From contig FLMG01004145.1 of assembly GCA_900088475.1 (NCBI GenBank), positions 1 through 38,771 on the forward strand: a stretch of DNA of 38,771 nucleotides, given 5' to 3'. Of this stretch, positions 7,440-29,763 are shown one piece after another (the first letter of the stretch is position 1; every line of letters begins with the position of its first letter). The notes beneath the pieces are model-generated. The model made no database searches and had not been told where the DNA came from. It saw only the letters and a program-made list of their open reading frames with translations. The stretch comes from Hyphochytrium catenoides. Its lineage: Eukaryota > Protista > Hyphochytriomycota. Both the position numbers and the translations under genes were made by a program.

Positions 7440-8219
7440 TTAAAGATTGATCACCTCCGGCATCACTGTCTCTTCGTCTCTATCTTGGTCTCTCTCTAGC
7501 AATCTAGAGTCCAAAGAAGAGAAAATGCGTTCCGCCGTGGTGGCCGCAGACGTAGCTGGAGAAGGCCCGTACGAGCTTCTTGCCTTCTTGCTGGCCTTCT
7601 CATCCACAGCGGTGTCAGCCATCATGTTGGGGAAGTGGCGCCGTAGAAAGGATCGCTGCCATGACTTTGAAAAGGCTTTCTTCTGCTCTGAAGAGCGGTT
7701 GCCCATCTGCAATAACCTAGCGGCGCACTCAGACATCATCTTCTCGGTGATGATCTCTCGCCGGCTCCGTCTGTCTGTCACCCACCACACTAGAAATTTC
7801 TCTTCATCCTCTGTAAGCCTAGTGGCAGGCCCAGAACGCTTGATCTCTTCAACGCCCCTCTTCTTGATGATCTGCGCTTGTCTGAAGATCGTGGTCTTGG
7901 GGATACTATAAGCAGAGTACAGCTCAGCCGCTCTCGATGCCGTGAGCTCGCCTCTAGCGACTTGCGAGGCCGCTTCGAGGAGCTTCTCAGGAGGATAGGA
8001 CTTCAGCTTCTTCCCTCTGTTGTTGTTGTGCGTGTTGAGATCGCGGTCTCCAGTCCTTTCTCTTCTTCCCCTTTCGGTGCTAGGCTGGGCGACCGCAAGC
8101 GTGTCGTCTAAACCATGGTGTCCATGCACGACAAGTTGAAGCGACCTGTGTGCTGCTAATGGAGAAGAGCTGCGGTGGCCCCGAAGAGCCTCCTCCAATG
8201 ACTGGCCTCTCAGCATCAT
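7440..8219 (-). CDS. HTH-psq + CENP-B/Tc5-type HTH DNA-binding protein (pogo/Tigger transposase-derived, no DDE domain)
   Basis: Single 259-aa ORF. KSYPPEKLLEAASQVARGELTASRAAELYSAYSIPKTTI is psq-like. GPATRLTEDEEKFLVWWV...IITEKMMSECAARLL...FSKSWQRSFLRRH is a CENP-B HTH. The ORF ends ~60 aa later with no catalytic domain. Confidence 0.8.
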   Translation of the reverse strand: MMLRGQSLEEALRGHRSSSPLAAHRSLQLVVHGHHGLDDTLAVAQPSTERGRRERTGDRDLNTHNNNRGKKLKSYPPEKLLEAASQVARGELTASRAAELYSAYSIPKTTIFRQAQIIKKRGVEEIKRSGPATRLTEDEEKFLVWWVTDRRSRREIITEKMMSECAARLLQMGNRSSEQKKAFSKSWQRSFLRRHFPNMMADTAVDEKASKKARSSYGPSPATSAATTAERIFSSLDSRLLERDQDRDEETVMPEVINL

Positions 8220-9592
8220 TTGAGACAGAAGCTGAGACGGAGATCAGCTTACGAAGCTAGCCATGGCCTCATCATGGCCCGGCGTAAAGGAGTGGGCTCA
8301 CCGCCTCCAATGAGAACAGACATAATCCATTCGGACAAAGTTGATGAAGGCGTTCTATCGTTTCTAATCCACCGACTAACATCTTCATTCAAATGCTCTG
8401 CGCATCAATCTGCATATTAGCGGTGCGAGATATCGCCCACCCTGCAGCAAGGGCTTCATACAATTCCAATCACAGCGCTCAACGCGCTCTCTGTGCAGCG
8501 CCTGACCTGCCGTAGAGCTCAGCGCGCCGCGCCTTGGAAGAGGTTTGCGGAGGTGTTGCCGATGAGAAGTGGTCAACGCTCTGGAAGCGGGCAAGCAAAA
8601 GAGAGAGAAACGGAGTAGGGTCAGACAGAGAAATACAGGGTGGAGACAGAGAGACATGAGAAGAGAGAAATTACAGAGTTCCGGGAGGCTGAGGAGGAGA
8701 CAGGGTGCTAGAGAGATATCTAGGAGCAGAGACAGAGAGACAGAGAGATACGTAGGAGCAAAGACAGAGAGATAGAGACTACAGATTGAGAGAGAACAAG
8801 AGAATTGAAACCTTTCACCCTACCATCTCCTGGAGGAGTACTGGCTGGGTGACCGGTAAAATGGCAGATTCAGAACCACCATTCACGAATCTAAAGCGTC
8901 ACATATCTTTATGATACAATTCCCAATGCTTCGTCTGGAAAATAGATTTCAGAGACTCTGTGAAGGCTTACTTATGTTTGCTTTTTTGATTCCTTCCTAC
9001 TGGAATAAAGGAAACATTGGGTGAAGAAACAAGAAGCGAGACGTGGCACAGAGGGGGAGAGAGAGNNNNNNNNNNNNNNNNNNNNNNNNNNNNNNNNNNN
9101 NNNNNNNNNNNNNNNNNNNNNNNNNNNNNNNNNNNNNNNNNNNGAGAGAGAGAGAGAGAGAGAAGAGTGAGCTAGCTGTAGGGCAGGGTGGCAGCTCCAC
9201 AGCCCCAGACGAGACTGAACTGGATTGCGGTGATGTGATGAGCGTGTTGGTCCTCTCTGAGTCTCTCTCTCTCTCTTGCTCTCTCTCCTCTTGCTCTCCC
9301 CTCCGTCCCCGTCACTCTCCTCCCACTCCCGCTCGCTTGTTGTCCCCTCTCCTCTGTCCCTGCTGCTCATCACCATAGCTCCACTCTGGCTCTCACTTCC
9401 TAACAGCTGCGTCTGACAGCGCAAACCAGTCTTTCCAAGCTTTCTAAAGGCCCCAACTAATCCTCAGGTGAGATTCTTGGCTGTCTTCAGAGTCGTCCGC
9501 AGACTTGCGCATTGTCCTTAGCCTTCCTTTCCCTCATCGCTGCAGAGAGAGCAGCGTCCCTACCCGGTGGCTGCTGCTGAGATATATCCCAA

Positions 9593-10881
9593 ATGGCGAC
9601 GAAGGCTCGGTCCGCGGCCGCGGTGGTGGCAGCGGGGAAACCGCGGCCTATTGCTGGCTCCTCCAACTCCTCAGACGCTGTGGCCAAGGCAGAGAGGATG
9701 CTCTCCGACATGAAGCAGGAGCTAGAAGTACTGCAGGTTAGGAGAAGGGCTACGACTGTCCAAGCACCGGGGACAAAGCCACCAAGAGATAGACTCTGAG
9801 TGAGAGAGAGAGAGATAGAGCCAAACAAGGGAAAGGCTAATGCAGAGTATGATGAGAGATAGACGACTAAGAGATCCTCCGGAGTACATAGCTTTGGCAG
9901 CTTTTCTCCACCTTTACTGATCTCTCTCTCTTTCTCTCTCTCTCTCTTGTTCTCTCCCTTTCGCTGTTTTTCTGTTCTTCTCTCTCTTGTCGCACAACTT
10001 AAAGGCTGAGCGTAAGAGGCTGGATGAGAAGGTTCGCCTAGGCAATGCTGCTGCTCCGAAGAAGCCGATGCTGAGCGATGAGAAGATTGACCAAGAGATC
10101 GAGCGTATGGAGTATAAGCGCACCACGACGTCTCTCTCACTGAACGACGAGAAGAAACTGGTCAAGGAGATAGAGAGCTTAAAGGCTGACAAGCTCCGGG
10201 TACGTGCGACGCAGACGAATGATAGCCCAGCATTCACTTCTTCGTCTCTCTCTCCCTCTCCAGCTTCTTCCTTTCCAGGCTAACAAATCGCGCGGGACTG
10301 CATGCGTTTCCCTATGTTAATTGTTAGCGCTTCTTTCTTCCGTCCTGATAGTTCGCTCTTTTGACATGGATACGTCCGTCGCGCAGAATAAGAAGTATGA
10401 GCAGCATATGGTTGGCGTTAATGCCCTGGCAGAGCAGCGCGCGGAGGTCATTGCAAAGATCAAAACCCGAGAAGAGGCGATCTCTGAGCTTCAGCGTCGG
10501 ATGAAGACGCTTGAGTTAGCAGCCAAAGCCGGAGTGAGTCTTGCCATCTTCTTGTGCGTGTCCTTTCTTGCGCTGCCCGCTTCCTCTGACATAGTCAGCG
10601 GCCTCTGAGGACCACCGCTGTCCTGTGGCTTTCCTGCTTGTCTCTTAGAGATCGCCGCTAACGCTTTACGCTTCCTTATGTGCCCGTCGTCCCTGTTAGG
10701 TGGCAGCTGAGGACTTGAAGACCATTGACGTGGAGGTGCCCACCCAGTTCTTAGGGGGCGTCATAGGGAAGAAGGGAGCCAACCTAACCCGGATAGAGCA
10801 GGAGTGCGGAGTATCCATCCAAGTTGTTGACACAGAGGAGGTGAGGATCATGAGTTGGCAATATAAGGAGAAATGGGGAGG

Positions 10882-10915
<34 letters not shown>

Positions 10916-13900
10916 GAATATACTTTGCAAACTAAAGCTGACAAACCGACCTCAACGCCCATCTCCCGCTCCTTTTCATCTCCTCCCTCACATCTAAATA
11001 TGGTGTCGGAGAGCAGAAAGTGCGCATCACAGGCTCGGAAACCGGCTGCGAGGCTGCCAAAGCTCAGATTCAGCTCACAACGCTTGCCTCCGAGGAGACT
11101 ATCGGGCTGCACCCCGACAAAATCAAAGTTATTCTTAGGTACAGGCCAGAGATAGAGGCACAGAGCGGTGCAAGGCTCATTATCAACAGAGAAGTAAGAT
11201 GTTGTCTCTCTCCTCTCTCTCTTGCTCCTGCGTCTTTACCTTTCTTCTCTCAAATAGTCTCGATCAGGCCTCTGGCTTCGGTCCCGACGTCTACTTCTCC
11301 TTTCCTATCTGCGCAGGTTCTCGCTCTTTTTCTCCCGCTCGTTCTGGGGCAGATATCCTGTCACTGAATTGTCATTTCGACCCGATGATGGACTCAGAGC
11401 GCATTCCCTCTGTATCTGATATAACGTATCATCCACTGACCCTGCGCATCTAGGGCATTTCTCCTGTTAATCTCTCTCTATCTCTCCGCTTTACCCTTTA
11501 ATCTCTTCTTATCACTTGTTGTTTGTCGCTCGTCGTTGCTGACTGCCCACCATATGGACTGGTTCTTGGTTCTGTTATGCAGCAAGGGACTCTCAAGCTT
11601 CTAGGCCTGAGTCCTCGAATTGCCCAAGCAAAGGAGTTGATAGGACAATATACGACGGGGCAAGTCATCGTGCCAGTGGAGCCGCGCCTAGTCGCAACGA
11701 TCATCGGCAAGGTGAGAAGGAGGCTCTCCTCTGCACTTTTCCTCTCTTGACTCGCTTGCTTCACCGCTCCATCCAAAGGTTGCTGCTGGACAACTCTCTC
11801 TTCACCGGCTCTAAGCTTTACCTAGTCCTCCTTTCTACTAGCTTCACACAGTCTAATTCTCAACTGCCTCCGCCTTCGATTTTTTGCAGAAAGGAGCTCG
11901 CATCAAGTCGATTGAGGAAGAGTCAGGCGCTGTGGTGGATGTTGGAGAGAAGGCCCTGGGGCAGGTCGTCCTGCACGGACGGGTGGAGGATGTAGCGAAA
12001 GCAAAGGTGCAGCAAGATAGTCTTCTCGCGCCGCGACCTTATTATAGACACGTTGAATACCTTTACGGCCGCTGACCCTTTCCATTGCTTGATTCACGGA
12101 TGAACTGCTCAGGCTCTCTCTGGTCCTGGTCTGGTTTGCCCTAATACTCTTTGGCTGCGTCCCCATGTCACGTAGGCCATTCTGGACGATATCATCAAGG
12201 AGAATGAGGAGCACACCTATGAGATCCCCGTACAGAGCTCCTTCATCAACTTTATGTTAGAGGATAAGGGCGCAGGAATGAAGCAGCTTAGAAGCCAGTG
12301 CCCAGGGTGCTTCATTGACGTCGACAAGGACCTTCTTCTCTTCAAGCTGTGAGTGCTATCTCCCTCTCACCTCATGCTCTTCTTTAGCTTTGCCTGGGCA
12401 ACGAAAGTTGGCCTCTTCTTAGTCACTTTCCCCTTGCGGCCTCGGCTGCACTGGCCTCACGTATAAGTCCTTGGTAGCTTGTCATGCTCTTCACAGCTCA
12501 AAGGCTAACGTGCTTGCCCTTTGCCCGACGTCATTGCTTGGCTCTTGGCCAGACGAGGCACCTCCGCCCAGCTTCAGACCGCGACGGCAGCCATCACTGC
12601 CGAGTTAGAGGCGTTTGAGAGCGGAGTGGAGCGGGTCAAAGCTGACCCGCACGCTGTGTCTCTTATTATCGGCAAGAGCGGAGCGAGAGTCAAGCACATT
12701 CAGGAGACAACTGGTTAGCAAAGAGGATGGAAACTTTGGATATGATAGAAGCGCGTTTTTATTTACTGCTTCCGTGTCTTCTACTGATCATTTAGGGGCC
12801 AAGATTGATGTGGACAAGGCTGCGTCAGTCATTCTAATCAGAGGCGAAGCGGAAGCGGTGGCCAAGGCGAAAGCTCTCGTGACGGAGACTATCAGGACAA
12901 ACCAAAGAGCCGTCGTCAAGATCCCGCATCAAGAGGTAAAGTGCAACCTCACCTTCTGACCCATCTCCAATATTTCCCTCTCTCTCATCCTCCTTTCTCT
13001 TTCTCTCTCTCTCTCTCTCTCTCTTCGGGGTGGGCTCTGTTGCGATTGGCCCTCTTTCTGCCATGCAACCTCCTTCATATTCATCTTGGGGATGGGATGT
13101 CTTGTATGCTTTCTGACCCATATATGCCCGCCTTAGGTGGCATACGCCCTGAGTGCGAATGATAAGGCTGAGCTGTTGAGGATCCAATACGAGTCCTTGG
13201 CGACCATAGTTGTCCTTAGAAGAGATATGGAGGTGAGACATGGGGTTAGCACAGAGCGGGCGATAGTGATCGACTAATATAAGAAGGGAGCACAAGAGGC
13301 ATAACGGCGTTAGGGTTTGCCGACTGAAGTATGCCCTAGAATGACGCGAAGAGGAGAGGAGGCAGCGGCAGGACTCTCACGCTGGCTAGCGCAGTCTTCT
13401 TCCCTATATCTGACATCGAGAGGACCACCGCTGTCACTCTTTGACCCTTTCTCTCCCTCCGTCGGACTGCGTAGATTGTTATAACAGGCACGACAGAGCA
13501 CATTGAACTAGCAAAACAAGGCATTGCCCGCGTGATAGATGAAAACCAGGTTGAGACAGTAGAGATTGATGAGGAGGACGTGCACCTTCTCATCGGGCCA
13601 GGAGGCAGCGTTATCAAAAAGGTAGGCGGCACCGATTAGCCCCTAAGCCTCAGAAGAACTGGGAAGCCCTAAACAGAGCTCAATATCTTGCAGTTAAGGG
13701 AGGAGACAGGCGCCAACATTCGGGTTGAGAAGGACAATAAAACCATTCAAATTGTTGGCAACAGGGACAAGATTAAAGCGGCGAAGAAGGCGATCATACA
13801 AATAACCGAAGGAAGCGGCAATGGCGATAACATCTTGCTCGAGGTCTGTCTCGGGGATCCTCTTCTCCATCTTTCCCATTGCTCCTTCTTTGTCGTTGTC

Positions 13901-16900
13901 TCCTTTGCTGCTCACGTGCTGCCCCATATGATTGTGATGATCGTTCTTAACATGGTTGAGAAATTTGTGCTGTCACGAGCCCAGAGTCTCATGTACTGGC
14001 CCGTCTTCTGTCTGCGCTTAGGTCCAGCCTGAGGCCATTGGGACCATTGTCGGCAAAAGTGGGGCAACCGTTAAGAAGTTCCAGGAAGAGTTCGGAGTGA
14101 CCATTGACGTTAGAAAGAGGTAAAAGACAAGTACGAGAGTGTCTCACATGAACGGATGTGCTAGGAAGGAGTGAGATAGTCAGTGTGAAGGATAAGGCGT
14201 GACGTACTTCTGTACATGTCGCTTGTATGCATTTTGATTTCTCTGCGTTGGGGGAGTGCTATGCTAGGGGCAGACGTAGCCGTTTGTCCTGTGGTCTGCT
14301 TCTCCTAAGGCTTCGCGACTAACGTGGCGTCTCATCATCACGTTGTACACAGTGGAAAGTCTGTTCGGATCAAGGGCGAGCCTGAGAATGTTTCCAAGTG
14401 CCGCGCAGCTATCCTCAAGATTATCAATGACACGATCATCACCGCCACAGTGGACATCCCTGCCGAGAAGTGAGTGTGAAATAATAAAAATGATGAAGGA
14501 AGTGACCTTAGAGAGAAAGGTGGAACTGAAACAAGAGCCAGAGATCTCCTGTCAGCCTAACGTCATCCAACCGTGGATCAGCCCCCAGGCCTTACTCACA
14601 GCGAAGTACAAGCTCCCTCGTTATACTTACAGGCTCTTGTTTGTTCTAGGGCTGGGCGGGTGCAGCAGTTCAGTTCCCTGCTGAAGGATCTGGAAGCCGA
14701 TGGCGGCGTCACGGTGAACTTCACGCCAGATAAGAAGGCTGTGAAGGTATGTGCCCTTCGTCACCTCTTTTTTCTCCGTCTTCTTGCTCTCTAGCTGCTA
14801 TAGTAGATGCGATAGTCTCACCAAGTAGAGTCTAGTAGTCTCATAGCTCTCCTCTTTTTGCCAATAGCAGCTTTCTAACCTCCACTCTGACTCGCAGATT
14901 CGGGGCAATGGCAACGTTGTTGGCGCAGCCAGGCGTCGAGTACAAATGCTTGTTAAAGACTGGCTAGAGGAGCCTCTCCCCGTCCTCACGGAGCACCTCA
15001 CCGCTCTACCAGCCAAGAATATCCAGCAGATAAAAGAGAAGCATGGAGTTAACCTCACGCCAGTTAGTACAAGCTCTCATTTCTTTTGAGCTTATCTTCC
15101 TTGGGTCAATCGATCGAACACTCTCTCGTCTTCGTTCCTTGCTAAGAGTGTCCCCTGAAATGCTGATTGTTTTGGCAGGACAAGGAGCTCGGGGCTTTGG
15201 TGCTTGCAGGGCCTGTGGAGAATGTCTTAGCTGCAAGAGGAGAAGTCGAGCAGCTGCTTAGGTTTTTCTTCCAGTCACATTATAAAGACGTGGTGGTGCC
15301 TAAGGGCGCTATCGGTATGTGCGACGATGTGGGCCCTTCCCTCTTTGTCTTCCTGAGCGTTGGGATTCTCCTACTTGTCGTTGCTTTTGCCGCAGCTAGT
15401 TCCATTTATATCCACACGATGCAGCTCCTTGCGATGTCTGGCTCTTCTCACATGTCTCTCCTTTGGCAGCCCTCCTTATGAGAAAGCGCAGAGAGATAGA
15501 GCAGGCTACTGGGGCTCTGCTGAGCCCTGACGCCCGCCAAGGTCGCGTGACGCTCATCGGAAGGACAGACGAGGATATTGTTAAGGCGAGAGAGGAAGTG
15601 CAGAACGCGGTAGAGGAGCACCGGCGGACGCATCAAGAAGTGGACGTGAAGGATCCTTACCTCGCCTCCTTCCTGGTTGGAAAGAAGGGCGCGACTATCA
15701 CAAAGGTATGACCCTTGCCTTCTAATTCTCTTTGCACCTTTCTGGCTGCCCTCAGTTAGCTCGGCTGACGACGTCGTCCCACAATGCCGCTCTTCCTCCG
15801 CTCTCTCTCTACTGGCAGCTTGCAAAGGAGACCGGCGCAAAGCTAGACTTGAACCGTGACGCCAAAGTCCTCATCATCACAGGTGAGGGAGAGGCGGTAG
15901 CGGCTGCAAAGGAAGCCGTAGAATCGCTGATAGAGAAGTATCACAAGGAGAATGCAGGTATGCAAGACCGAACCTTGACTGATTGGACACCTTAGTTCCC
16001 CTTCTCTTAAGAGCTTACAATGCTCTGCCTACATCTTCCACCTTGCGCTAATGTCCGGCCTTATGCACCTAGTGCTGGAGGTGGATGAGGATGAGGTCCC
16101 ATCACTCATTGGAAAGGGCGGCAGCGGCATTAAGCGGCTGCGTGAGGAGACGGGCTGCAACATCAACATCTCAGACCGCGGAGGAGTCATCCACCTGCAA
16201 GGCTCCGAAGAAGCCATTGCTCAAGCGAAGGAGGAAATAAAGAGAATTATCGGCGACAAAATGAAGGTAATCAATAGTCACCTCTCTTACTCTGCTATCT
16301 CTTTCTCCCTCCTTTTTTTATGTAGTTGCTCTTCCTGTCCTTCTCTCTCTCTTTCTCGTTCTCGCTCACTCTCGGTCTTGCGTTCTGTCTGTCTCTCTCT
16401 CTGTGCTCTTCCCCTCTCTCTGTCTCTCTCCTTCTTCTCCCCATTCTCTTCAAGGCGTCTCATGCCTGCTCATTTACCGGCTGCCTCACCCCTTTCCCCT
16501 CTGCCAGTGATACCTCACCTCATAAGATTGAAATCCATTCCTTGACTGCTCCTTGATGCGCTCATTTATGCGGCTGTTGCGCCCTTGTCCCTCTCATTCT
16601 TTTCCCAGGTTACCCTCTCCTGCTCCTCGTATGCAGCCGGACAGGTCATTGGCAAAGGTGGAGCCACGGTGAAGGAGATTCAGAGCAGCACGGGAGCTAA
16701 GATCGACGTGAATCGTGAGAGTAGGACTGTAGTGATCAAGGGCTCGGAGGAAGAGGTCGAAGAGGCCAAGCAGAGAGTGGAGAAGATCATTGAGGAGGCC
16801 AACAAGAGCGCCCCACCGCCGCCACCTCCTGCGCCTGTGAAGAGCAAGCAGGAGAACGAAGAGGAGGAGAAACCTGCTGATGCTCCTAGGTAACTGCAGT

Positions 16901-17649
16901 GGAATATCTGTTCAACGTCGTCAACGACAATCTCCTCTATCTTTGACTGCCATCTTTGTATGGATATCTGTCTCATTCTCTCTCTTGCCCAAAAGTACTC
17001 TTCTGTTTATTGGCGTGATCTCCTTGGTCTGTTCCCGATTTTGCCCTGCCCATCTTTGTCTCTTGTCTTGCAAGCTACGCGGGTGTGGTCGCTTAGCCTA
17101 GGGCCAACTAAATCTCTTTCTTTCTCTCTCTCTCTAATTATCTCTCTCTCTCCCTCTTTCCTTCTCTCTCTCTCTCTCTTTCTTTTCTCTCTCTTCCTGG
17201 TTGCCTGTCTAACCGTCCTTTCGCATTGATTTAGTTCGGAGGCTCCTAAGACTGCTCCAGGTTTCATTCCTGGACTTCATACGAGGCAGCAACAGCCTGT
17301 CCTTGCAGCGAAGCTGTCGAAGAGCGCAGCAAAGCGGCAGAGGAAGAAGATGGCCAAGGGAGGGGAGGATGCAGATGTGAACATTGTGAACCTTCTCGTA
17401 GGTGCAGAGGAAGAGAAGCTCCCTGTCCCTCCTTCGGCAGCAACTTCTCGGCCACCGCCTGCTGTCTCTGCCTCTCTCTCCTCTCCCGCCGTCTCCCAAC
17501 CAGTCAGCAAGTCCAAACCCAAGGCGGCTGCTAACGCTGTGTCTAGCTTTCTAGTGGACGAAGACAGTGATAACGTCCAGCCAAAGGGAGCGAAGGCCAA
17601 CGGTGAGAGCTACTATCGCTCCACCGCTGGCTACTCTATCCGCCTATAA
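9593..17649 (+). CDS. Vigilin/Scp160-like multi-KH RNA-binding protein (14 KH repeats) with N-terminal Bfr1/PPI-like coiled coil; multi-exon
   Basis: Exons give repeated KH motifs with intact GxxG loops: VIGKKGAN, IIGK|KGAR, IIGKSGAR, LIGPGGSV, IVGKSGAT, LVGKKGAT, LIGKGGSG, VIGKGGAT. Six further repeats have degenerate loops. The N-terminus contains SDEKIDQEIERMEYKRTTTSLSLNDEKKLVKEIESLK. A Pro/Ala/Ser-rich tail ends YYRSTAGYSIRL*. Confidence 0.9.
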
Positions 17650-18542: not shown

Positions 18543-18809
18543 NNNNNNNNNNNNNNNNNNNNNNNNNNNNNNNNNNNNNNNNNNNAGAGAGAGAGAGAGA
18601 GAGAGATAAGAAAAATAGGGGGAGGACAGGGCCAGGAGCTGTTATAATACGTCTAGAAGGTCTTATGGAGGGTCATGCACCTTAAGCGCGTCATAGTCCT
18701 GTCTGCTCAGGATAATCTCTTCCGTGCCTCCGTCTCCCTCCCGACTTGCCTCTTCCTCTTCCTCCTCTCGGCCGCGCTCTGACAAGTCAGCAATGTGCTC
18801 CGCCTCCAT
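17900..18809 (-). CDS. Hypothetical highly charged, probably disordered protein (~160 aa, exons 18809-18681 and 18253-17900)
   Basis: MEAEHIADLSERGREEEEEE...SRQDYDALK | KLHELVGIPALSLRLSKPICDEDLE...KPRRPSLTLKKKALC*. Phase-0 GT-AG intron with a CT-rich tract. No recognisable domain. Confidence 0.55.
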
Positions 18810-19678: not shown

Positions 19679-22600
19679 CTAGCAATCAAAGGTCCGAATG
19701 ACCCTGACCCATGTCGCTCTGCAAACCGGGCACTGCGGAGCGCTCGACGCTCTGCTGAGAATAGTGCAACAGCTCAAACAGACACAGCGATGGCCACATG
19801 GCTCCAGGACTGTGTCGATGGAACAGTCCTCACAGACCTAAACAGTGGAGACGGCCAGTAAGTAACCATGAGACGGCCAGTAATGACTATGAGACGGACC
19901 AACGCCATGATAAAGACATACGTAGTATAATGGAATGTGAAAAATATTCACAAAGAGCACTAAGATGAGCTCGCTTCACCTTGCAGAGATTCGCGTCCAT
20001 GAGCTGCTTTAGCTGCCGGCGGAGTCTCCTCACCTCCTCCTCAAGCTCCAAGCTTGGTACCTCTTCACTTGCTGCTCCGACTCGTCCATTCGAATGCGAA
20101 TTCTGGTGATCAAGCCTAAAACTCTTGGACAAGGTCTCCTTCAAGTCTTGACAAGAAGCCATAATCTGAGCCAATAATTGACGGTCAACACATGTCCAAT
20201 CTGTGGTCCAAGAGAGCTGGCCAGGGTCTATAATAACTAACCTTTCGCCTGTGACCCAAGGGAACGCCCAGCTCTCTGAGGTCAAGATCGGAGAGGAGCA
20301 ACAAGGAGTCCACATCAATCCTCTCGGCCTCGAACCTGCGCAAAGGCGTGACCAAAGGAAGAGGCATAAAAAAGTAAGGACACGCCTCGCCCCGCACCAG
20401 AGAATGAGAACAATCCCCAATGCCTGAGGAGGCATCTTACATGTCCACGTACTGCGCCATTGAGAGCGCTTCCAGGAAGTCAGAGACACCGGAGGGAAAC
20501 GACGCTGGCTTCTTGCCCTCAAGCGCCTCAAAATGATTGAATGAAGCTGAAATCGGTCCCAATCCCGCTGCATCAGCTCCGTTCCTCTGTCCGCCGCTTT
20601 GTCGATGCACGTCAGCTCTTCTACCTGCTCTGGTACCCTCGTCTATTGCACAGCTCTGAACTCTACTGACCATCATCTCTTCCATCGCGGCCTTAACAGC
20701 AGGTTCTATCTTCACACTTCTTAGGTCATTGTAGAAAGCGCCGTCAAATCCTCCAAAGATAAACAGCCTGTCTTCAAAGACGACTGCGCCGTGCCGTCGT
20801 CGTGGAGAAGGAGCAAGACCAAAATCGGTTATCTGCGGAGTGCTCCAGCGAGCTCTCACCGGGACACCATTGTGGTAGGACTCTACAGCGCCGATGGAAG
20901 CCCAAGTTAATGGGCCAAAGCAGGAGAGACGAGACAGAGGATATGCCCCAAATGGGCAAAGAGAAACACGGGGCAATCATCAGATAGAGTAGATCTCATG
21001 CAACATGATCATACTCGAGGTAACTCCTTCAAGACGTCGTTGGTCCTGAGCAATCGACGTGATAGAGAGTTTCATGTGCAGGCAAAACTAATGCACTCCG
21101 AGTAGCACACAGAAGGAACGTTCGAAGATTAGGGGAAAGAGTGCGCGGAAGATGAGCTTCCTTGGGAAGAGACATACCGATTGTGAGAATATGACAGTCG
21201 TTGAAGTCCATTCCGGCCCTGCCACCAAACAACACGAAGCTCTCTCCAACACAAGTCATACTATGGCCCCACCGCGCTGCCGGTGGGGTGCCAGAGAGAG
21301 CGGGCTGGGACCACCGCGCCTTTCCGCTTCGCCCCTCAAAGGAGAGAAAGTGCAGGTCATCATGACAAGAGTAGTCCCTACCGGTTGTGCCACCAAAGAG
21401 TAAGGCTGAACCGGAGGAGGGATGAGAAGTAAGAGAATGAAAGCGACGAGGGGAGGGAACACTGCCTTCCGCATGCACCTTCAGCCACCGGACAGACCCT
21501 ACATTTGTGGTATGAAGTCGGATGACAGAGAAGTTAAACGATTCGGGTTGGAGAGACAATTGACGGAAAGCAAAGGAGAGAGGTCGTGGAGAAAGAGGTG
21601 AGAGCGTAGATCAGGAGGGGAGATTCACCGAGGAGACTTGCCCATACCATCCTGCAACTCGGTGAGGTCGAGAACGAGGAGATCGTTCAAGTCAAGCCCA
21701 GAACCGGAAACGAAGCCGCCAAAAAACGCTAAATAATCTACAGTCAGGCGTCGAGGATCAGATCAAAGTGATCGCAAAAGAAGAGGAAGAACGGCATGCA
21801 ATGTAAGGGCAAAGAAAAGAAAAGGTCTGAACACATCTAGCATAGTTTTGAGCCATAGTTGACAAGCAACCTGTCTGCATCTTATCACCGACCACAGCTG
21901 CAGCTTGAGAGGAACGAGCTGGGGGAGCTAGTCCGCCTACTCGAGGATGCCACCAGATCCAAGGCTCCATGGCTACGAAGGTGAGACAACAAAGCCCGCA
22001 TGAGGACGGAGTAACTTTTCCATAGCTGAGTGGCACCGAAAAAAGCTAAGGAAGGAGGACAGAAAAGCATATTTGTCGAAGACGCTCTCGCTGCGAAGTA
22101 AAGACAGTAGACGATTCCTGAGAGGAGACCGCAGATCCAAGAGCCATGCGAGCACAGAGTCAGCTATCCTCAGAAGACCCGACACTCGAAACCGCCTCTC
22201 CCCCGCATAATAGCCTTCCTACCAATGTCTAGGACGACGACATCTTGGAAGTCACAGAACCCAACACCCCCGAAGAGAACAAGGGATGTCCCCATGAGGG
22301 TGCATGTGTGGTTTGACCGTGAAGCCGGGACAGTCCCGTGCACCAAAGGCTTGAGCCACTCCATCTCATCTGCAAAAGTGAAGGCATCAGTACAGCACGT
22401 CAAGCAACAGACCCCAACGCAGAGGCAAGGGAGCTCATCGCGTCAGCGCACAGCTCCCGACAGAGAAGAATGCGGGAGAAGTGGATAGAAGGTAAGAACC
22501 ATGCGAGGAGCGTCTTACTCACCAAAGTCGAGCACGTACAAATCTGCCAGATATCCTGCGTACGAGCAAGAAGAAGCTGAGGACTTCCACTAGATGGGTT

Positions 22601-23240: not shown

Positions 23241-24376
23241 TCATCGCCTCCCTTGTAAGATCGTGACTATTGATTACTAATAACTGATTCTTGAGGGCTG
23301 CAAAGAGTTTTCTTGTGATGCAGATTTTGCTGCACAGAACATGTCGACCAGCAGATCGGCTGATCTTCAGGTTACAGGGTGGTAACAGAGCGAATCTGAG
23401 GGAGGAGGGCGGAGTATGATTTGGGTATGGGAGTCCTGCTACAGTTTATGTCCCTCTTTTCTCTCTCTCTCTCTCTCTTTCTCTCTTTCTCTCTCTCGAA
23501 CTCTTCCTTATTCCTTCTCTTTCTTTGTCTCTCTCTCGTCTCTCTCTGTCTCTCTCTGTCTCGATTGAGTGATCGCTCTCACTGTAGCTGTCTCTTTATC
23601 TCTCCCTCCTGGCCTTTCTTGTCTTTGTCTCCCCCTTTCTATGGAGGTGCTTGCTCCCTTCGTCCCAGTTCTCCAGGTGCCCATCATCTTTCTCTCTCTT
23701 TCNNNNNNNNNNNNNNNNNNNNNNNNNNNNNNNNNNNNNNNNNNNNNNNNNNNNNNNNNNNNNNNNNNNNNNNNNNNTCTCTCTTCTCTCTCTCTCTCTG
23801 TGGGTTCACACCCATCTCTCCCTGCCGATCCGCCCCTCAGCTTTGAATTGTAGGGAGATGGAAACAGGACGAAGAGAAAGAGGTCAGACAAAGGGCAAGA
23901 ACAGTGGAGAGAAAGGAGAGAGAAAGAGAGATAAAGCAGGTTCATCTTATCTCCTGATCGATTGACTGACAGGAGGACGAGCCGTTCTGCCTTCTGCTAC
24001 CTTTACTCTTCTGCTGTGTTGAAGTCGGGAGAGGAAGAGAAGGGAGAGACTCAGAGTAGACAAAAGAGAGTTCACAGTGCATCGCAGATCGATCTCTCAG
24101 TCTTATATCAGGCAAAGGAGAGCGGTACAACCTGGAGAGAGAGAGAGAGAGCTCTAGGCGTTGTTGCCCTTCGAAGGGCACTTCTGCTGCTCTTCTCTCC
24201 TGCTTCATAAAAGCTGGTCAAGAAAGAGAGAACAGGCGCACCAAGCAAAGTGAACAGAAGCTGTGATGAGTGAGACGGAGGCACGGAGACAGACAGAGAC
24301 AAAAAGCAAGANNNNNNNNNNNNNNNNNNNNNNNNNNNNNNNNNNNNNNNNNNNNNNNNNNNNNNNNNNNNNNNNN

Positions 24377-27300
24377 CTCCAACGGGAGGACAGCCCGCAG
24401 CTCATCTGGCAGTTCCCAGGCTTCTGTGACGTGCTGGAGGAGAGAGAAAGGGACTCCACTGGCCTAGCAGGTGAGAGACAGGAGAGAATGGAAGCGACAG
24501 CCCGGCATGGGAGAAAAGAGAAGGAGAAAGAGAGATGAAATGTCTCAGTGAAAATGAAGGTCATGAGATAAGCACTTTTTCTCTTGACGCTTTTTCCTAA
24601 AGCTATCTCTCTCCCTTCTCTCTCTCTCCCTCTTTCTCTCTCTCTTTCAAAGGAACTATGGAGAGTCCCGGCAAGGCAGAGCAGAAGCTGAAAGACAGAA
24701 ACGGCGTCAATGAGACGCAGCAGCTCCTACATAAGGAAGGACAGCTAGTCCGCACGTCGTCGCGGATGATGGCCAGGAATACGCTTACAAGATCAGCACC
24801 CAAGCTAATACTCGTCACCGTAAGGCTGCAGAGGTGTTAACGTCGTCAGAGAAAGCATTAGAGGCTAGAGACAATGCCAGACGAGAGAGAAAATGAGAGG
24901 GGAGAGAGAGAGGGAAGGAGGAAGAGAAAGAGAGAGAGACGAAAGAGTTATCAACGTGGATCTCCCTTTCCTTCCCCACCACATCTACCTCTTACCTCTC
25001 TTTCTTAACGAATAGGTCGGGCTGCCAGCGCGTGGAAAGTCTTTCATCTCCAAGAAAATCCAACGCTTTCTCTCTTGGCGAGGAGAGAAGGTTGAGGTCT
25101 TTAACGTGGGGAACTACCGTCGGCAGTCGGTGACAGGGCGCCAGGACGCCAACTGGTTCAATAACACGCAGGATAGGGACAAGCTCGCCCAGGGTGTTAT
25201 GGAGCATATGATAGAGTAAGAGATTGCATCTAATCTGACGTCGAGAGTTCTTTCTCTCTCCTCTTACTCCTCACTCTCTAGGTCTATATCCCCTATCTCT
25301 CTCTTTGCTCTGCTCTCTCTCTCTCTCTCTCTCTGCCTCTCTCTTTCTCGCTGGCTCGCTACCCGTCTTATTGCTAAGTCTTTGCTTTCTACCATGCGTT
25401 TTCGTCTGCTCTACTCCCTCAGCAAAGGCGGATATTTAGTATCAGATCGTCTCTCCATAGTTCTTTTGTTGCCCTGCTGGCACTGCATACTCCGCATTCT
25501 ACTGCTCCACTGTCTGTCCTCTTCATCTCTGACCTTCCGCGGTTCTCTTCTTGCTCCAGCTGGCTTCACAAAGGCGGGGACGTTGCCATCTTTGATGCTA
25601 CTAATACCACTAGAGCGCGGCGGGAACTCCTCCAGGTAGTCAGAGACACGATCGGGAAGAGAGGGAGAGACTGGAGGATGTCCAGCAAACAACTGTCCAA
25701 GTGGAAGACAGATGCCCTAACCTGCTACTCTTCTCCTTCTTTGACTGCGCCATCTTTAGGAAAGAGTTACAAAGTTCTCAGTAGACGTTGGTCTCCGCAT
25801 TGCCGTGGTCTTTCTGGAGAGTATTTGCACAGACAACCGCGTCCTCTCCCGGAACTATCATCAGAAGGTCCTCACCTCTCCTGACTTCAAGGGTGTGAGC
25901 TATGATGACGCTGTTGGAGACTTGAAGAACCGGATCGAGAACTATAAGAAAGTGTATGAGACTATTACGGATGATGAGCACTGTAGCTACGTCAAGCTCT
26001 TCAACCTCCAATCCAAAGTCCATGCCAACCACATGTAAGATAGCTCTCTTCTCTCGCTTTCTCCCTCTCTCTCTCTCGTGTCTGTCTGTCTACTAGGGCC
26101 TAACTGGGGGTCCCCCTCGTTCTACTGCAGTCCTCCGCATGCCCTTGCTTCGAACGTGTCTGCCCTGCCCTACCCTGCCCCTTAAAAATAGTGATTGATG
26201 ATGAGCTCTTTCACTTTCCAGCCTCCTAACTCGAGATCCACTAAGGGTTATCTCGTTACGCTGTGATCGTCTCTATCGTGCATACGTGTATATACATAAC
26301 TTACCCACACCTTCTCCTTTGCTACTTCCTCAGCTATGGACGACTCGCCAAGTCGCTTCTTCCCTACCTTATGAGCATCCACATAGGGAATCGACCGATC
26401 TGGCTTACTCGTGCGGGGCATTGCGAAGAGGTGAAATCTTCGTATTACGTTATGGACAATGTGCCTTGCATAGCTTCACGGAGCGCCAAGCTCAGCGTCG
26501 AGGGTAAGCTGCGAGCATAGCGAGAAAGGACACGTGAGAGAAGGTGTTCTGCTTCGTAGCCTTCTCCTGATAACGTTTATTCTATCTNNNNNNNNNNNNN
26601 NNNNNNNNNNNNNNNNNNNNNNNNNNNNNNNNNNNNNNNNNNNNNNNNNNNNNNNNNNCACTCAACCCATTAGACAAGGGCGAAGCGTACGGGATCACAG
26701 TTGATGAGATGAAGGAGAAGATGCCGGTAAGGGAAAAGACGGAGAGATATAGGGACAACAAAGATGAGCATCTGACTCACCCACCATTCTCTTAGGAGGC
26801 TTGGGCGGAGTGGGAGAGAGATCCTCTGCACACTCGCTTCCCTGGCGGAGAGAGTTACCATGACTTGATGATCCGGTTAGAGGCCATAGTGACAGACATT
26901 GAGCAGCAAACTGATCCTGTCCTTATCGTCTCACATATATCGGCACTACAGGTGAGCCTAGAAGCGAATATCGGCACGGCCTAGGACAGCTTTCTTTCTC
27001 TCTCTCTCTCTCCCCCTGGTTCTCCCTCGCACAACCACGCGCACACTTACACACGCCCTTTCTGGTTTCTTGTCCTCGTCGCCCCAACTTTTGCCTCCGT
27101 GTCTCTCTCGTGTTGTTTGTCCGCTTGGCAGCTCTGAGTTAGACTTCCTAGCTATCTTCTCAATCTCTCTTCATATGTCATCTTCCTTTCCTCGCTTTGA
27201 TTCACATTGCTCCCTCTGTTGCCCTTGGTAATCACTTTATCATCGTCCCTCTTGGGCCCACGCCTATGCCGCTCCCTGCTGACGATGCTCTCCCTTAGGT

Positions 27301-27517: not shown

Positions 27518-28169
27518 AGGGCTTGGAGCTCCTTTACCTCTAATTTATTAGCCAAAGCGCCGGAGAGAAGAAGGCCACAACGAGACACAGCAAGCTAACT
27601 TATAGCTGCCTTTTGCCATCTCTTTGACGGACTGAGACCTAGCTCTATGATGTGCTAGACCTATTGCGGCGGGTGGCGGCTTGGACTTTAGATTTTCTCT
27701 TCTTGTCAAAGATATGCTGCCGTCGCCTCTCTCTCTCTTGTCTGCTACTATCCCAGTGAACGCTTTCTGTTACCATCTACTTGTACGCCCCACGGCAACT
27801 ATCCTGCTCCTTGTAGAGACAGTCTATCATTGGAGGAAAGCGAAATATGAGAGGGGTAGAAGGCAAGGATAGCAGCGTAGAGTGGCTGGGATGGAAGACA
27901 GAGAAGATGATGAGGGTGGACAAGAAGGTATGGCTCTTCCTTGAGGAGGAGACTGCTGCTCTTCCTCTCTTCCGTGTCGGTTGACCAAAGAGTTGAAGAA
28001 GTGACGAGCGCTTTGCCTTTGTCGCCCCGCCGACAAACTGCATCACCCCTTGATATATTCTGAATAAGAAAGGTATTGAGTGATACTTTCATGTTAAATA
28101 ACAAAGTCTATCCGAAATCCGCCGATGGGAGGGAGGATGATACACTTCATAATTATTTGATCCTCTGCC

Positions 28170-28174
<5 letters not shown>

Positions 28175-28240
<66 letters not shown>

Positions 28241-28362
28241 CTCTCTCACACTCTCTCTCTGCGTCTATCTTTTTCTCTCTTTCGCTATCTCTCACTATCT
28301 CTTTCTCTCTCTTTTTCCTCCCCCTTCTCCCTCATTCTTTCTCTCTCATTCTTTCTCTCTCT
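28175..28362. repeat. (CT)n microsatellite / polypyrimidine tract
   Basis: Perfect CT run ~28175-28237, followed by degenerate CT. Confidence 0.9.
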
Positions 28363-28600
28363 CTTTTATGGGATAGACTCTGCCTGTTCAAGGACTGCGA
28401 TGTGCAGTTTACGGGATGATGGTCACTTTCGGAGATCAGACATCATCATCAAGCATCGCAGACAATCGGTCTGCACCAGCGGCAGGGCCTCACTGCCCTG
28501 CCTGGCCTCAGTCTGCAGCCGTCCCCGCGTCAAGCTGCAGACACCGAGCCGCGAGGGAGGGGAAGAGACAGAGCAAGACCCCGAGCGCGTAGGGAGCAGG

Positions 28601-28796
28601 ATGGGACAGGAAAAGCTACGGATTCTCTGTCTGCACGGACTCTATCAGAACTCCAAGTCTTTTGCAGAGAAAGTGAGACCGATCAGGTGAGAAGATGGCG
28701 GCGCCTCCTAGAGCCTTGGGATCTCTTGTCCTCTTAACCGTCTTCACTTCCCCTTCGTTCTCTCCCGCCCTTGGGGTGGTCTTCCCTCTTTTCTGA

Positions 28797-28843
<47 letters not shown>

Positions 28844-29763
28844 CTCTGTGTCTCTGTCTCTCTCACCCTCTCTCTCTCTCTCTGTCTCTCTCTCTTTCTT
28901 TCTCTCTCTCTCTCTTTCTGTCTCTCTCTCCCCCTTCTCTCTCTCTTCGAATACTCATCTCTGCTTTTTATATAGCGATGCCTGCCAAGACTTGGCCGAA
29001 TTCCTCTTCCTAGATGGTCCTTACCTTGTAACGCCGAAGATACTCAGCCGACCGCCTCGGTCCTCGAGGATCAGACCTAAGGCTCATGGAGCACTAGATG
29101 CGCAACAGGGCGCCCGAGGGCTCTCTTCCTCTTCAGTTCATCCCTTCCGTGCCTGGTGGGTCCCACCTGGCGTGGTAGGAGAGGTTGGAGAGGGAGAGAG
29201 GGACAATGCAATGGCCCCAGAGATGCACACTTGCACTGCCTTCCACATCAAGCGCTTTCTAGCTTCAGCGGAGCCTGTTGACGGCATTCTTGGGTTCTCG
29301 CAGGGCGCCGCCCTTGCTTCACTGCTGTGCACCAATGAGGTCAGACCGCCAGCTATCAATTATCTACCGCCTTCTTCTATTCTGTCTCTCACGTTCCTAG
29401 GCTTGAAGTGACCAGGGACATCCACTTATCTCTCTCCCTCTCTCTGTCCTATCTCTCTCACAGGCTGCAAGGCATATGGAGTGGACTCCCAGTCGAGCCA
29501 TTTATATCAGCGGATATGTGTCAGACGACAGCCGAGGAATGCACGCAGAGATGTTTAAGTCTAACGTGATCCCTCATCTACAAACGTTACACGTCTACGG
29601 AGAGCAAGACAGAGTAGTGCTGCCAGAGAAGAGCAGAGAGATGGCTCTGTTCTTCCGTCATCAGAAGGAACATCGAGCGCTTGTGCACCGCCATGCTGAC
29701 GGCCACATTGTGCCGAAAACTGCAGAATTTGTCGACCTCGTGCGGAGATTTCTCTCTGCCTAG
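28601..29763 (+). CDS. OVCA2: FSH1/OVCA2-type serine hydrolase (alpha/beta hydrolase), 3 exons
   Basis: LRILCLHGLYQN, FLFLDGP, RAWW, nucleophile elbow DGILGFSQGA, LHVYGEQDRVV (Asp), HADGHIVP (His). An upstream in-frame ATG at 28400 could extend the N-terminus. Confidence 0.9.

What the first reader, a model, noticed from the sequence alone, without database searches (positions are those of the whole stretch)
9593..16890. Rosetta-stone fusion: Bfr1/PPI-like coiled coil joined to a 14-KH vigilin/Scp160-like array
Seen: exon 10005-10199 encodes IDQEIERMEYKRTTTSLSLNDEKKLVKEIESLK, followed by 14 KH repeats. Known: this 'I..LE....T.SLSL.EEK..IKEI' pattern typifies yeast Bfr1 and plant proton-pump interactors, and yeast Bfr1 and Scp160 (14 KH) are separate proteins in the same ER-polysome mRNP. 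Inference: here the two partners occur in one polypeptide, implying an ancient or convergent Bfr1-vigilin module for ER-localised translation.
Basis: partly seen in the sequence, partly recalled or inferred. Interest (0 to 1): 0.8.

Follow-up and report, generated by a model that had tools for sequence, protein, structure and literature searches.

The report
Bfr1-like module fused to 14-KH protein
This is a real 23-exon eukaryotic gene for a 1264-residue RNA-binding protein in which a short helical module carrying the signature motif of Bfr1-type proteins sits in front of 14 KH domains. The same arrangement occurs, unannotated, in oomycetes and other protists, and it fits the Bfr1-Scp160 partnership known from yeast.

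Summary
Exon 10005-10199 encodes the quoted peptide and 14 KH units follow. The gene does not stop at 16890: that stop codon lies inside a GTAACT donor, and a 23rd exon (17235-17649) supplies a C-terminal tail conserved in homologues. The corrected model is 9593-17649, 23 exons, 1264 aa.

The N-terminal ~165 aa is significantly related to stand-alone 480-580 aa coiled-coil proteins, some of which UniRef names "Nuclear segregation protein Bfr1". hhalign gives 98.7% probability and E = 4.6e-16 over 128 columns. The window's own N-terminus scores 47 bits against their profile, versus at most 8.5 bits for 2000 shuffles. The signal sits almost entirely in a ~33-residue motif (TTS[LM]SL-x-[DE]EK-x-L[LIV]KEI) plus a weak colinear C-terminal flank, so only about a quarter of a Bfr1 protein is present. 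An archaeal DUF7121 protein carries the same motif.

The fusion is real. Phytophthora nicotianae encodes it in one intronless ORF; Albugo, Pythium, Pinguiococcus and environmental eukaryotes also have it.

The KH array matches vigilin/Scp160 in architecture, but orthology is not shown. The proposed function is inferred, not tested.

The parts
9593..17649 (+). Whole coding region: 23 exons, 1264 aa. Exons: 9593-9736, 10005-10199, 10387-10533, 10700-10840, 11017-11193, 11583-11711, 11890-12006, 12176-12348, 12553-12713, 12796-12935, 13137-13232, 13475-13621, 13694-13843, 14022-14119, 14353-14469, 14650-14746, 14898-15062, 15179-15314, 15470-15705, 15819-15957, 16073-16266, 16609-16889, 17235-17649 (stop codon included).
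   Evidence: All introns are GT-AG and the reading frame stays open. The model aligns end to end with the 1240-1316 aa homologues P0018, P0008, P0011 and P0005. Family-profile hits lie on the + strand and are mostly in profile order.
9593..9736 (+). Exon 1: start codon and the first part of helix 1 of the N-terminal module (aa 1-48).
   Evidence: First ATG after an in-frame stop. Aligns with the N-termini of homologues.
10005..10199 (+). Exon 2: end of helix 1, the APKKP loop, helix 2, the signature motif and the start of helix 3 (aa 49-113).
   Evidence: A phmmer search of 1.84 billion representatives gave 18 hits at E <= 0.001; every long one is motif plus KH domains. Scores E = 1.8e-13 against the Bfr1-like profile.
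10098..10184 (+). Signature motif IERMEYKRTTTSLSLNDEKKLVKEIESLK (aa 80-108), the core shared with Bfr1-like proteins and archaeal DUF7121.
   Evidence: The motif columns alone give hhalign 98.3% and E = 2.4e-14. Masking the motif drops the window's score from 47 to 1.2 bits. In the AF2 model of the Phytophthora homologue, TSMS is the turn between helix 2 and helix 3.
10387..10533 (+). Exon 3: rest of long helix 3 (aa 114-162), ending just before KH1.
   Evidence: Aligns without a gap after exon 2 in the family alignment, which supports the 10199 -> 10387 splice. E = 5e-12 against the N-terminal profile A3.
10700..16889 (+). Exons 4-22: array of 14 KH-type units (aa 174-231, 254-292, 299-358, 368-424, 437-495, 515-562, 570-628, 639-697, 719-763, 782-826, 838-892, 905-961, 971-1028, 1037-1095), then a Pro/Glu-rich linker.
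   Evidence: Iterated family KH profile. Pfam KH_1 on the exons, best 63 bits. P0018 and P0008 have the same count of 14.
16890..17234 (+). Intron 22 (345 nt).
   Evidence: donor AG|GTAACT, CT-rich tract, acceptor TTTAG|T. The junction is in frame.
17235..17649 (+). Exon 23: low-complexity tail with a basic patch (KLSKSAAKRQRKKMAK) and the conserved extreme C-terminus (17605-17646, ESYYRSTAGYSIRL), then TAA.
   Evidence: Aligns with the C-termini of P0011 (…GYYHSSSGYSLRL), P0018 and P0008. Family profile positions 1165-1264, E = 6.7e-4 among 1203 six-frame segments. No Pfam match.

Best explanation
The locus is one spliced gene for a cytoplasmic multi-KH RNA-binding protein with vigilin-like architecture: 14 KH units, 8 with GXXG and 6 diverged. 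In front of the KH array sits a ~160-residue three-helix module (long helix, basic Pro loop, short helix, TTS-x-S turn, very long helix). This module is homologous to the central signature segment of stand-alone Bfr1-family proteins. Those anatomy points are shown here. What follows is inferred. The KH array binds mRNAs. The Bfr1-type module supplies in cis what Bfr1 supplies in trans in yeast, where Bfr1 is needed for Scp160 to associate with polysomes and both sit in overlapping polysome- and ER-associated mRNPs. The basic patch and the conserved C-terminal tail are further parts of unknown role. The module most likely arose by partial duplication of a Bfr1-type gene onto a multi-KH gene in an ancestor of stramenopiles and the window's lineage. 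This last step is inference from few data. The confidence given is for the whole statement: the anatomy and the homology of the module alone I would put near 0.9, the functional mechanism near 0.4.
For: Gene model and colinearity with homologues. Fourteen KH units. Exon 2 finds only motif-plus-KH proteins among 1.84 billion representatives. The fusion lies in uninterrupted ORFs: Phytophthora nicotianae XP_008900569.1 is 3951 nt with no intron; a metagenome eukaryote has the module and KH1 in one ORF; 4-kb environmental contigs carry a complete 1260-aa ORF. Albugo, Pythium and Pinguiococcus members. N-terminal profile versus stand-alone proteins: P0020 E = 3.4e-8 for a database of 5.8 billion. 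Their relatives are named Nuclear segregation protein Bfr1 by UniRef. hhalign 98.65%, E = 4.6e-16, 128 columns. The window's N-terminus scores 47.1 bits versus at most 8.5 for 2000 shuffles. The C-terminal flank alone picks the exactly colinear position (P = 0.004). The Bfr1-like profile gets at most 18.6 bits against PDB coiled coils. AF2 model: pLDDT 95, three helices. Yeast biology of Bfr1, Scp160 and Asc1: PMC6859859, PMC10939154, PMC13659451. Bfr1 RNA cross-link sites, including K138: PMC6859859.
Against: The flanks of the motif carry little independent signal. With the motif masked, the score is 1.2 bits. The N-terminal flank's best match is not colinear. The rest of Bfr1 is absent: its N-terminal region, its second coiled coil and its C-terminal block. 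An archaeal DUF7121 protein shares the same motif, so the module could come from a wider, older family and not from Bfr1 itself. Vigilin orthology of the KH array is unproven. There are no expression, localisation or binding data for any member. The organism of the window is unknown, and I could not check whether it also has a stand-alone Bfr1.
Confidence: 0.7

Rival explanations
1. The N-terminal module is Bfr1-type, but the KH array is an independent, lineage-specific multi-KH expansion and not an orthologue of vigilin/Scp160. The fusion would then say nothing specific about the Bfr1-Scp160 pair. It would only show that this module works with KH arrays.
For: Against PDB sequences, the family profile scores FBP, IMP1-3, Nova-1, hnRNP K and PCBP above vigilin; the single-domain vigilin entries score 23-28 bits. 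phmmer with P0018 finds PCBP2, Nova-1 and IMP1 but no vigilin. The positions of GXXG and diverged units (GXXG in 1, 3, 5, 7, 8, 12, 13, 14) differ from Scp160 (2, 8-12, 14; PMC1994781). One Phytophthora member is named Far upstream element-binding protein 1.
Against: Fourteen KH units filling a ~1260-aa protein is the defining and otherwise unusual vigilin architecture (PMC10939154). The positions of diverged units are not conserved even between Scp160 and animal vigilins, so that mismatch is uninformative. Pfam KH_Vigilin is passed above its cut-off in P0008 (45.6 bits), P0018 (41 bits) and the window's exon 22 (30.5 bits against a cut-off of 27), although KH_1 scores higher on the same stretches. 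PDB holds only a few single vigilin domains.
Confidence: 0.4
2. The module derives from, or is best classed with, the archaeal-type DUF7121 coiled-coil family, and the resemblance to Bfr1 is only through a shared ancient motif.
For: A Thermoplasmata MAG encodes a 292-aa DUF7121 protein (70.8 bits, cut-off 29) containing ...EIARMEIKQETTSMSLEDENELLEKI. It matches the N-terminal profile at 93.6% with E = 2.1e-7, and the Bfr1-like profile at 94.9% with E = 4.5e-8; both matches cover the motif only. Exon 2 and P0015 give sub-threshold DUF7121 hits at the same profile positions. P0001 carries a precomputed hit marked 'weak'.
Against: The match to eukaryotic Bfr1-like proteins is longer and stronger (128 columns, E = 4.6e-16). 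The window's score for DUF7121 is 17 bits, below the cut-off of 29. Only one archaeal locus was recovered, and with a very strict pattern; contamination or horizontal transfer is not excluded.
Confidence: 0.15
3. The similarity is a chance or convergent feature of charged coiled coils, or the gene model wrongly joins two neighbouring genes.
For: Coiled coils inflate profile scores. The signal is short (~33 residues). There are no RNA data for this genome.
Against: 2000 composition-matched shuffles reach at most 8.5 bits, against 47.1 observed. Only one place in the Bfr1-like profile is hit. PDB coiled coils reach at most 18.6 bits. The motif includes non-coiled-coil residues (TTS-x-S-L) that form a turn. 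The same junction lies inside single ORFs in Phytophthora and other organisms. The intron between exon 3 and exon 4 is only 166 nt.
Confidence: 0.04

Closest known systems
Bfr1 family (yeast Bfr1p; proteins that UniRef names 'Nuclear segregation protein Bfr1')
   Same: Both share the signature segment: a helix, then TTS[ML]SL-x-[DE]EK-x-L[LIV]KE[IM], then a following helix. hhalign gives 98.7% over 128 columns. In yeast, Bfr1 associates with polysome and ER mRNPs together with the 14-KH protein Scp160.
   Different: Only about a quarter of a Bfr1-like protein is present. The N-terminal region, the second coiled coil and the conserved C-terminal block of the 480-580 aa stand-alone proteins are missing. 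Here the segment is covalently followed by KH domains.
Vigilin / Scp160 / HDLBP family
   Same: Fourteen KH units fill most of a ~1260-aa protein, as a mixture of GXXG-bearing and diverged units.
   Different: Vigilins are not described with a Bfr1-type N-terminal module. No specific sequence affinity to vigilin KH domains was seen. This family has its own conserved C-terminal tail (YY-x-S-x-x-G-x-x-[IVL]R[LV]).
Pfam DUF7121 (PF23435), archaeal ~300-aa coiled-coil proteins
   Same: The same ETTSMSL-x-[DE]E motif occurs at profile positions ~127-166.
   Different: The window's module is below the family cut-off (17 bits against 29). Similarity is confined to the motif. There are no KH domains in the archaeal protein.
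Plant proton pump interactor (PPI1)
   Same: A Coleochaete scutata (streptophyte alga) stand-alone homologue belongs to the Bfr1-like set.
   Different: This was not tested with a tool-supplied land-plant sequence. PPI1 is a stand-alone protein without KH domains.

Membership tests
Bfr1 family | Central signature segment (motif plus flanking helices) homologous to family members | tested here: met
   hhalign A3 versus A4: 98.65%, E = 4.6e-16, 128 columns. Window N-terminus 47.1 bits versus at most 8.5 in shuffles. P0020 E = 3.4e-8 in a database of 5.8 billion.
Bfr1 family | Full-length architecture: ~470-580 aa stand-alone protein with N-terminal region, further coiled coils and conserved C-terminal block | tested here: not met
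   Only columns 124-255 of the 581-column profile are matched. KH1 begins directly after the module. The conserved blocks of the stand-alone proteins are seen.
Bfr1 family | Relationship to S. cerevisiae Bfr1p itself | tested here: inconclusive
   No tool-supplied yeast sequence was available. Its K138 agrees with the numbering in PMC6859859, and my recalled full sequence also places R38 and H79 correctly. That fragment aligns at the motif: 22.4 bits against A3 and 14.8 against A4, with shuffles reaching at most 11.2.
Bfr1 family | Polysome/ER association and RNA binding | not testable with these tools
   Needs experiments. Yeast data are in PMC6859859.
Vigilin/Scp160 | [quoted passage not shown] | tested here: met
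   14 units between aa 174 and 1095 of 1264. Definition from PMC10939154.
Vigilin/Scp160 | Mixture of conserved (GXXG) and diverged KH domains | tested here: met
   GXXG in units 1, 3, 5, 7, 8, 12, 13 and 14; diverged in 2, 4, 6, 9, 10 and 11 (sequence). Compare PMC1994781.
Vigilin/Scp160 | Specific sequence relationship (orthology) to vigilin KH domains | tested here: inconclusive
   PDB searches rank FBP, IMP, Nova and hnRNP K above vigilin single domains. Pfam KH_Vigilin is passed above its cut-off in P0008, P0018 and exon 22, but below KH_1 on the same stretches. No full-length vigilin was available for a tree.
Vigilin/Scp160 | Binding of the last two KH domains to Asc1/RACK1 on the 40S subunit | not testable with these tools
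   Feature taken from PMC10939154.
Pfam DUF7121 (PF23435) | Score at or above the gathering cut-off (29 bits) | tested here: not met
   Exon 2: 17 bits, E = 0.0041, profile positions 128-161. The archaeal control scores 70.8 bits.
Rosetta-stone fusion (Bfr1 + Scp160) | Components separate in some genomes and fused in others | tested here: inconclusive
   Stand-alone Bfr1-like proteins occur in diatoms and Coleochaete. Fusions occur in oomycetes, Pinguiococcus and environmental eukaryotes. However, only part of Bfr1 is fused, and orthology of the KH part to Scp160 is unproven.

The most novel reading that the evidence does not exclude
The ~80-residue TTS[ML]SL helical-corner module is an ancient element with archaeal relatives (DUF7121). 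It is the working part of Bfr1 that couples vigilin-type KH scaffolds to translating ribosomes or mRNA. In stramenopiles and the window's lineage it has been hard-wired onto the vigilin orthologue. On this reading, Bfr1 and vigilin form one ancestral machine for ER and polysome mRNPs, and the fusion pinpoints the interface.
Probability: 0.3. Interest if true: 0.7.

Novelty: new variant of a known kind. Interest (0 to 1): 0.55.

Why it matters
Bfr1 has no recognised domain. Its link to Scp160/vigilin rests on co-purification and shared phenotypes in yeast.

A conserved natural fusion of its signature segment to a 14-KH protein gives independent, evolutionary support for that partnership. It also narrows the relevant part of Bfr1 to about 80 residues around the conserved motif. 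By my recollection of the yeast sequence, this motif includes the RNA cross-link site K138.

The fusion gives a name to the unannotated N-terminus of "KH domain-containing" or "hypothetical" proteins in oomycetes and other protists. It also ties DUF7121 to a eukaryotic RNA-biology context. All of this is directly testable in yeast and in oomycetes.

Tried and rejected
- A phmmer search with P0010 residues 45-215 against Bfr1-sized candidates found only P0010 itself. Single-sequence sensitivity was too low for a 5.8-billion database.
- Pfam has no model for the module. Exon 2 gives only a sub-threshold DUF7121 hit. None of 14 stand-alone Bfr1-like proteins matches DUF7121 at E <= 1 in this Pfam copy, although precomputed lists show PF23435.3 on many of them. 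I therefore do not use DUF7121 as the family name.
- PDB sequence searches with exon 2 and with the Bfr1-like profile gave only insignificant coiled-coil hits.
- A Foldseek search of the AF2 model against PDB gave no match with E < 0.1, only generic helical hairpins.
- Alternative splices were rejected because homologues show no insertion or deletion there and the KH C-terminal helix would be lost: 10203 -> 10352, 14746 -> 14868 and 15882 -> 16073.
- An out-of-frame peptide at 16844-16891 resembles homologues' basic/LLGN region. It was rejected as the coding frame, because a stop precedes it and exon 23 supplies the true counterpart.
- Identifying the organism failed. The 532-aa single-exon ORF is not on record, and Rfam found nothing.
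- Literature searches for Bfr1+PPI, vigilin+Toxoplasma, DUF7121 and fusion reports found nothing relevant.
- Jackson & Kepes 1994 and Kramer 2014 are not held. The Bfr1 paper has no supplement held.
Full report
**1. What is in the sequence**

The window is eukaryotic nuclear DNA of about 51% G+C. It contains six runs of N and many (CT)n tracts. On the + strand between 9593 and 17649, short open segments are joined by GT-AG introns.

I anchored 22 peptide cores and enumerated every frame-preserving GT..AG pair between them. That gave a first model. I then corrected it against full-length homologues.

The final model has 23 exons and 1264 codons; coordinates are in the parts list.

Two corrections were needed:
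- **The 3' end.** The stop at 16891-16893 lies inside the donor AG|GTAACT. Splicing 16889 -> 17235 keeps the frame and adds 138 residues.
  - The added residues carry a basic patch and the terminus ...YYRSTAGYSIRL.
  - These align with the C-termini of P0011, P0018 and P0008.
  - They match family-profile positions 1165-1264 (E = 6.7e-4 among 1203 six-frame segments).
- **Exon 17.** It most likely starts at 14898, because homologues have no counterpart for the ten residues that 14868 would add.

**2. The KH array**

Pfam KH_1 matches many exons, up to 63 bits. A KH profile seeded on the GXXG-bearing units of five family members and iterated finds 14 units in the window's protein. P0018 and P0008 also have 14.

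Eight of the window's units keep GXXG (1, 3, 5, 7, 8, 12, 13, 14) and six are diverged. The weaker units rest on a profile trained on this family, but their regular ~70-residue spacing supports them.

**3. The N-terminal module is not a generic coiled coil**

- Exon 2 alone, searched with phmmer against 1.84 billion representatives, gave 18 hits at E <= 0.001. All the long ones carry the same motif followed by KH domains.
- A profile of these N-termini (A1) then retrieved stand-alone proteins of 478-579 aa without KH domains. P0020 scored E = 3.4e-8 for a database of 5.8 billion.
- These stand-alone proteins align with each other over their whole length.
- A profile of the stand-alone proteins retrieves hundreds of diatom proteins.
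  - UniRef names several of them "Nuclear segregation protein Bfr1" or "Nuclear segregation protein".
  - JGI names others "coiled-coil DUF342 family protein".
  - One member, P0022, is from the streptophyte alga Coleochaete scutata.
- Profile-profile comparison of the fusion N-termini (A3) with the stand-alone set (A4) gives 98.65% probability, E = 4.6e-16 and 128 aligned columns, at a single place in the 581-column profile.
- The window's own spliced N-terminal 170 residues score 47.1 bits against the A4 profile. The best of 2000 shuffles scores 8.5 bits.
- In the six-frame translation of the whole window, only the exon-2 segment matches.
- As a control for coiled-coil bias, the A4 profile scores at most 18.6 bits against all PDB chains.

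**4. How far the homology reaches**

With the 29-residue motif masked, the window's score falls to 1.2 bits. Split profiles gave the following:

| Part of the module | Result against the Bfr1-like profile |
|---|---|
| Motif columns alone | 98.3%, E = 2.4e-14 |
| C-terminal flank alone | Picks the exactly colinear position, weakly (P = 0.004) |
| N-terminal flank alone | Best match is not colinear |

The demonstrable relationship is therefore a module of about 80 residues: the motif plus the following helix. This is embedded in a three-helix unit.

AlphaFold2 on the Phytophthora homologue gives pLDDT 95, with helices 6-43, 53-69 and 74-141. The TSMS residues form the turn between the last two helices. 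Foldseek finds only generic hairpins.

The rest of a Bfr1-like protein is absent from the fusion: its N-terminal region, its later coiled coils and its conserved C-terminal block.

**5. The fusion is real and conserved**

- P0011 is Phytophthora nicotianae XP_008900569.1. It is encoded by a single 3951-nt ORF without introns.
- P0005 is Albugo candida CCI49913.1. P0019 is from Pythium insidiosum. P0015 is from Pinguiococcus pyrenoidosus.
- P0001, the closest relative of exon 2 (57% identity), has the module and KH1 in one ORF on a 39-kb metagenome eukaryotic contig, with more KH ORFs directly downstream.
- P0018 is a complete 1260-aa ORF on ~4-kb contigs from several JGI samples.
- Public names are "hypothetical protein", "K Homology domain-containing protein" and, once, "Far upstream element-binding protein 1". 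The module is nowhere annotated.
- In the window, the exon 3/4 junction is supported by uninterrupted alignment to these single-ORF homologues and by a 166-nt intron. There is no RNA evidence.

**6. Relation to yeast Bfr1, plant PPI and archaea**

I had no tool-supplied yeast or land-plant sequence.

- **Yeast Bfr1 fragment.** Its K138 matches the numbering in PMC6859859, and my recalled full sequence also places R38 and H79 correctly.
  - It aligns at the motif in both profiles: 22.4 and 14.8 bits, with shuffles at most 11.2.
  - K138, a reported in-vivo RNA cross-link site, falls on the conserved Lys of L[LIV]KE[IM].
- **PPI1 fragment.** It aligns at the same place with 27.5 and 33.2 bits.
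- **Archaea.** A scan of prokaryotic genomes found one Thermoplasmata MAG with a 292-aa protein.
  - It is a clear DUF7121 member (70.8 bits) and contains ...KQETTSMSLEDE....
  - It matches both eukaryotic profiles at the motif only.
  - This explains the sub-threshold DUF7121 hits of exon 2 and P0015 and shows that the motif is older than eukaryotes. Transfer or contamination is not excluded.

**7. Is the KH part a vigilin?**

Sequence searches against the PDB, however, rank FBP, IMP, Nova, hnRNP K and PCBP domains above the vigilin single domains. Pfam KH_Vigilin hits exceed the cut-off but lie under stronger KH_1 hits.

Orthology therefore remains open, and I put it at roughly even odds.

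**8. Mechanism**

Shown here:
- one polypeptide consisting of a Bfr1-type module, 14 KH units, a basic patch and a conserved tail;
- conservation of this arrangement across stramenopiles and unidentified eukaryotes.

Inferred:
- The protein is an mRNA-binding scaffold on polysomes, possibly ER-bound.
- The module provides in cis the function by which Bfr1 enables Scp160 to join polysomes in yeast. PMC6859859 cites Lang et al. 2001 for this, and PMC13659451 describes the overlapping mRNPs.

**9. Surroundings**

Nothing nearby suggests a functional link:
- a Tc5/psq-type HTH ORF (7440-8219, minus strand);
- Kelch-repeat exons (20.4-21.6 kb, minus strand);
- FSH1 hydrolase exons (28.6-29.4 kb, plus strand);
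- a 532-aa Cys/Met PLP-enzyme ORF (32618-34216, plus strand).

No Rfam family was found.

**10. Verdict**

The fusion appears undescribed in the literature I could search, although the proteins themselves are already in public databases. I class it as a new variant of a known kind, of moderate interest.

Noticed in passing
window 17605-17646; also the C-termini of P0011, P0018 and P0008: The family has a conserved extreme C-terminus, YY-x-S-x-x-G-[YFI]-x-[IVL]-R-[LV]. It is preceded by a basic patch (window KLSKSAAKRQRKKMAK; Phytophthora KLTKNQRRRMRKRAE). There is no Pfam match and no explanation.
   Followed up: partly
L008 429-1307 (Thermoplasmata archaeon MAG JAZGAR010000047.1): An archaeal 292-aa DUF7121 protein carries an almost identical ETTSMSL-EDE motif. 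It sits next to an NTP-transferase gene. This suggests the Bfr1 signature motif has archaeal relatives. Only one locus was recovered, with a strict pattern.
   Followed up: partly
window 16844-16891, frame +2: An out-of-frame peptide, SRRTKRRRNLLMLLGN, overlaps the end of exon 22. It resembles the basic/LLGNG region of homologues' tails. A stop precedes it, and exon 23 holds the in-frame counterpart. It is probably a coincidence of GA-rich sequence.
   Followed up: partly
L001 10001-13751: In the closest relative (a metagenome eukaryotic contig), the gene is called as four consecutive ORFs of 253, 413, 287 and 259 aa separated by 3-74 nt. This is presumably very short introns split by a prokaryote-style gene caller. 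EF-1alpha-like fragments lie upstream.
   Followed up: no
P0144 (KUF83631.1, Phytophthora nicotianae): One cluster member of the fusion family is named 'Far upstream element-binding protein 1' (1360 aa). This is likely a transfer from a best KH hit and not a true FUBP.
   Followed up: no
window 9066-9143, 18543-18585, 23703-23777, 24312-24376, 26588-26658, 35241-35288: Six runs of N (43-78 bases) show a draft scaffold. (CT)n/(GA)n microsatellites fill many introns and intergenic stretches.
   Followed up: no
window 7440-8219 (-), 20437-21559 (-), 28076-29411 (+), 32618-34216 (+): Neighbouring coding pieces are a Tc5/psq HTH protein (possibly transposon-derived), a Kelch-repeat gene, an FSH1 serine hydrolase, and a single-ORF 532-aa Cys/Met-metabolism PLP enzyme. 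The exact PLP-enzyme protein is not on record in the public gene index.
   Followed up: partly
P0020-P0141 (stand-alone Bfr1-like proteins): Precomputed Pfam lists put PF23435.3 (DUF7121) on many of these proteins. hmmscan with the PF23435.1 copy reports no such hit at E <= 1 for 14 of them. This is a version or filter discrepancy.
   Followed up: partly
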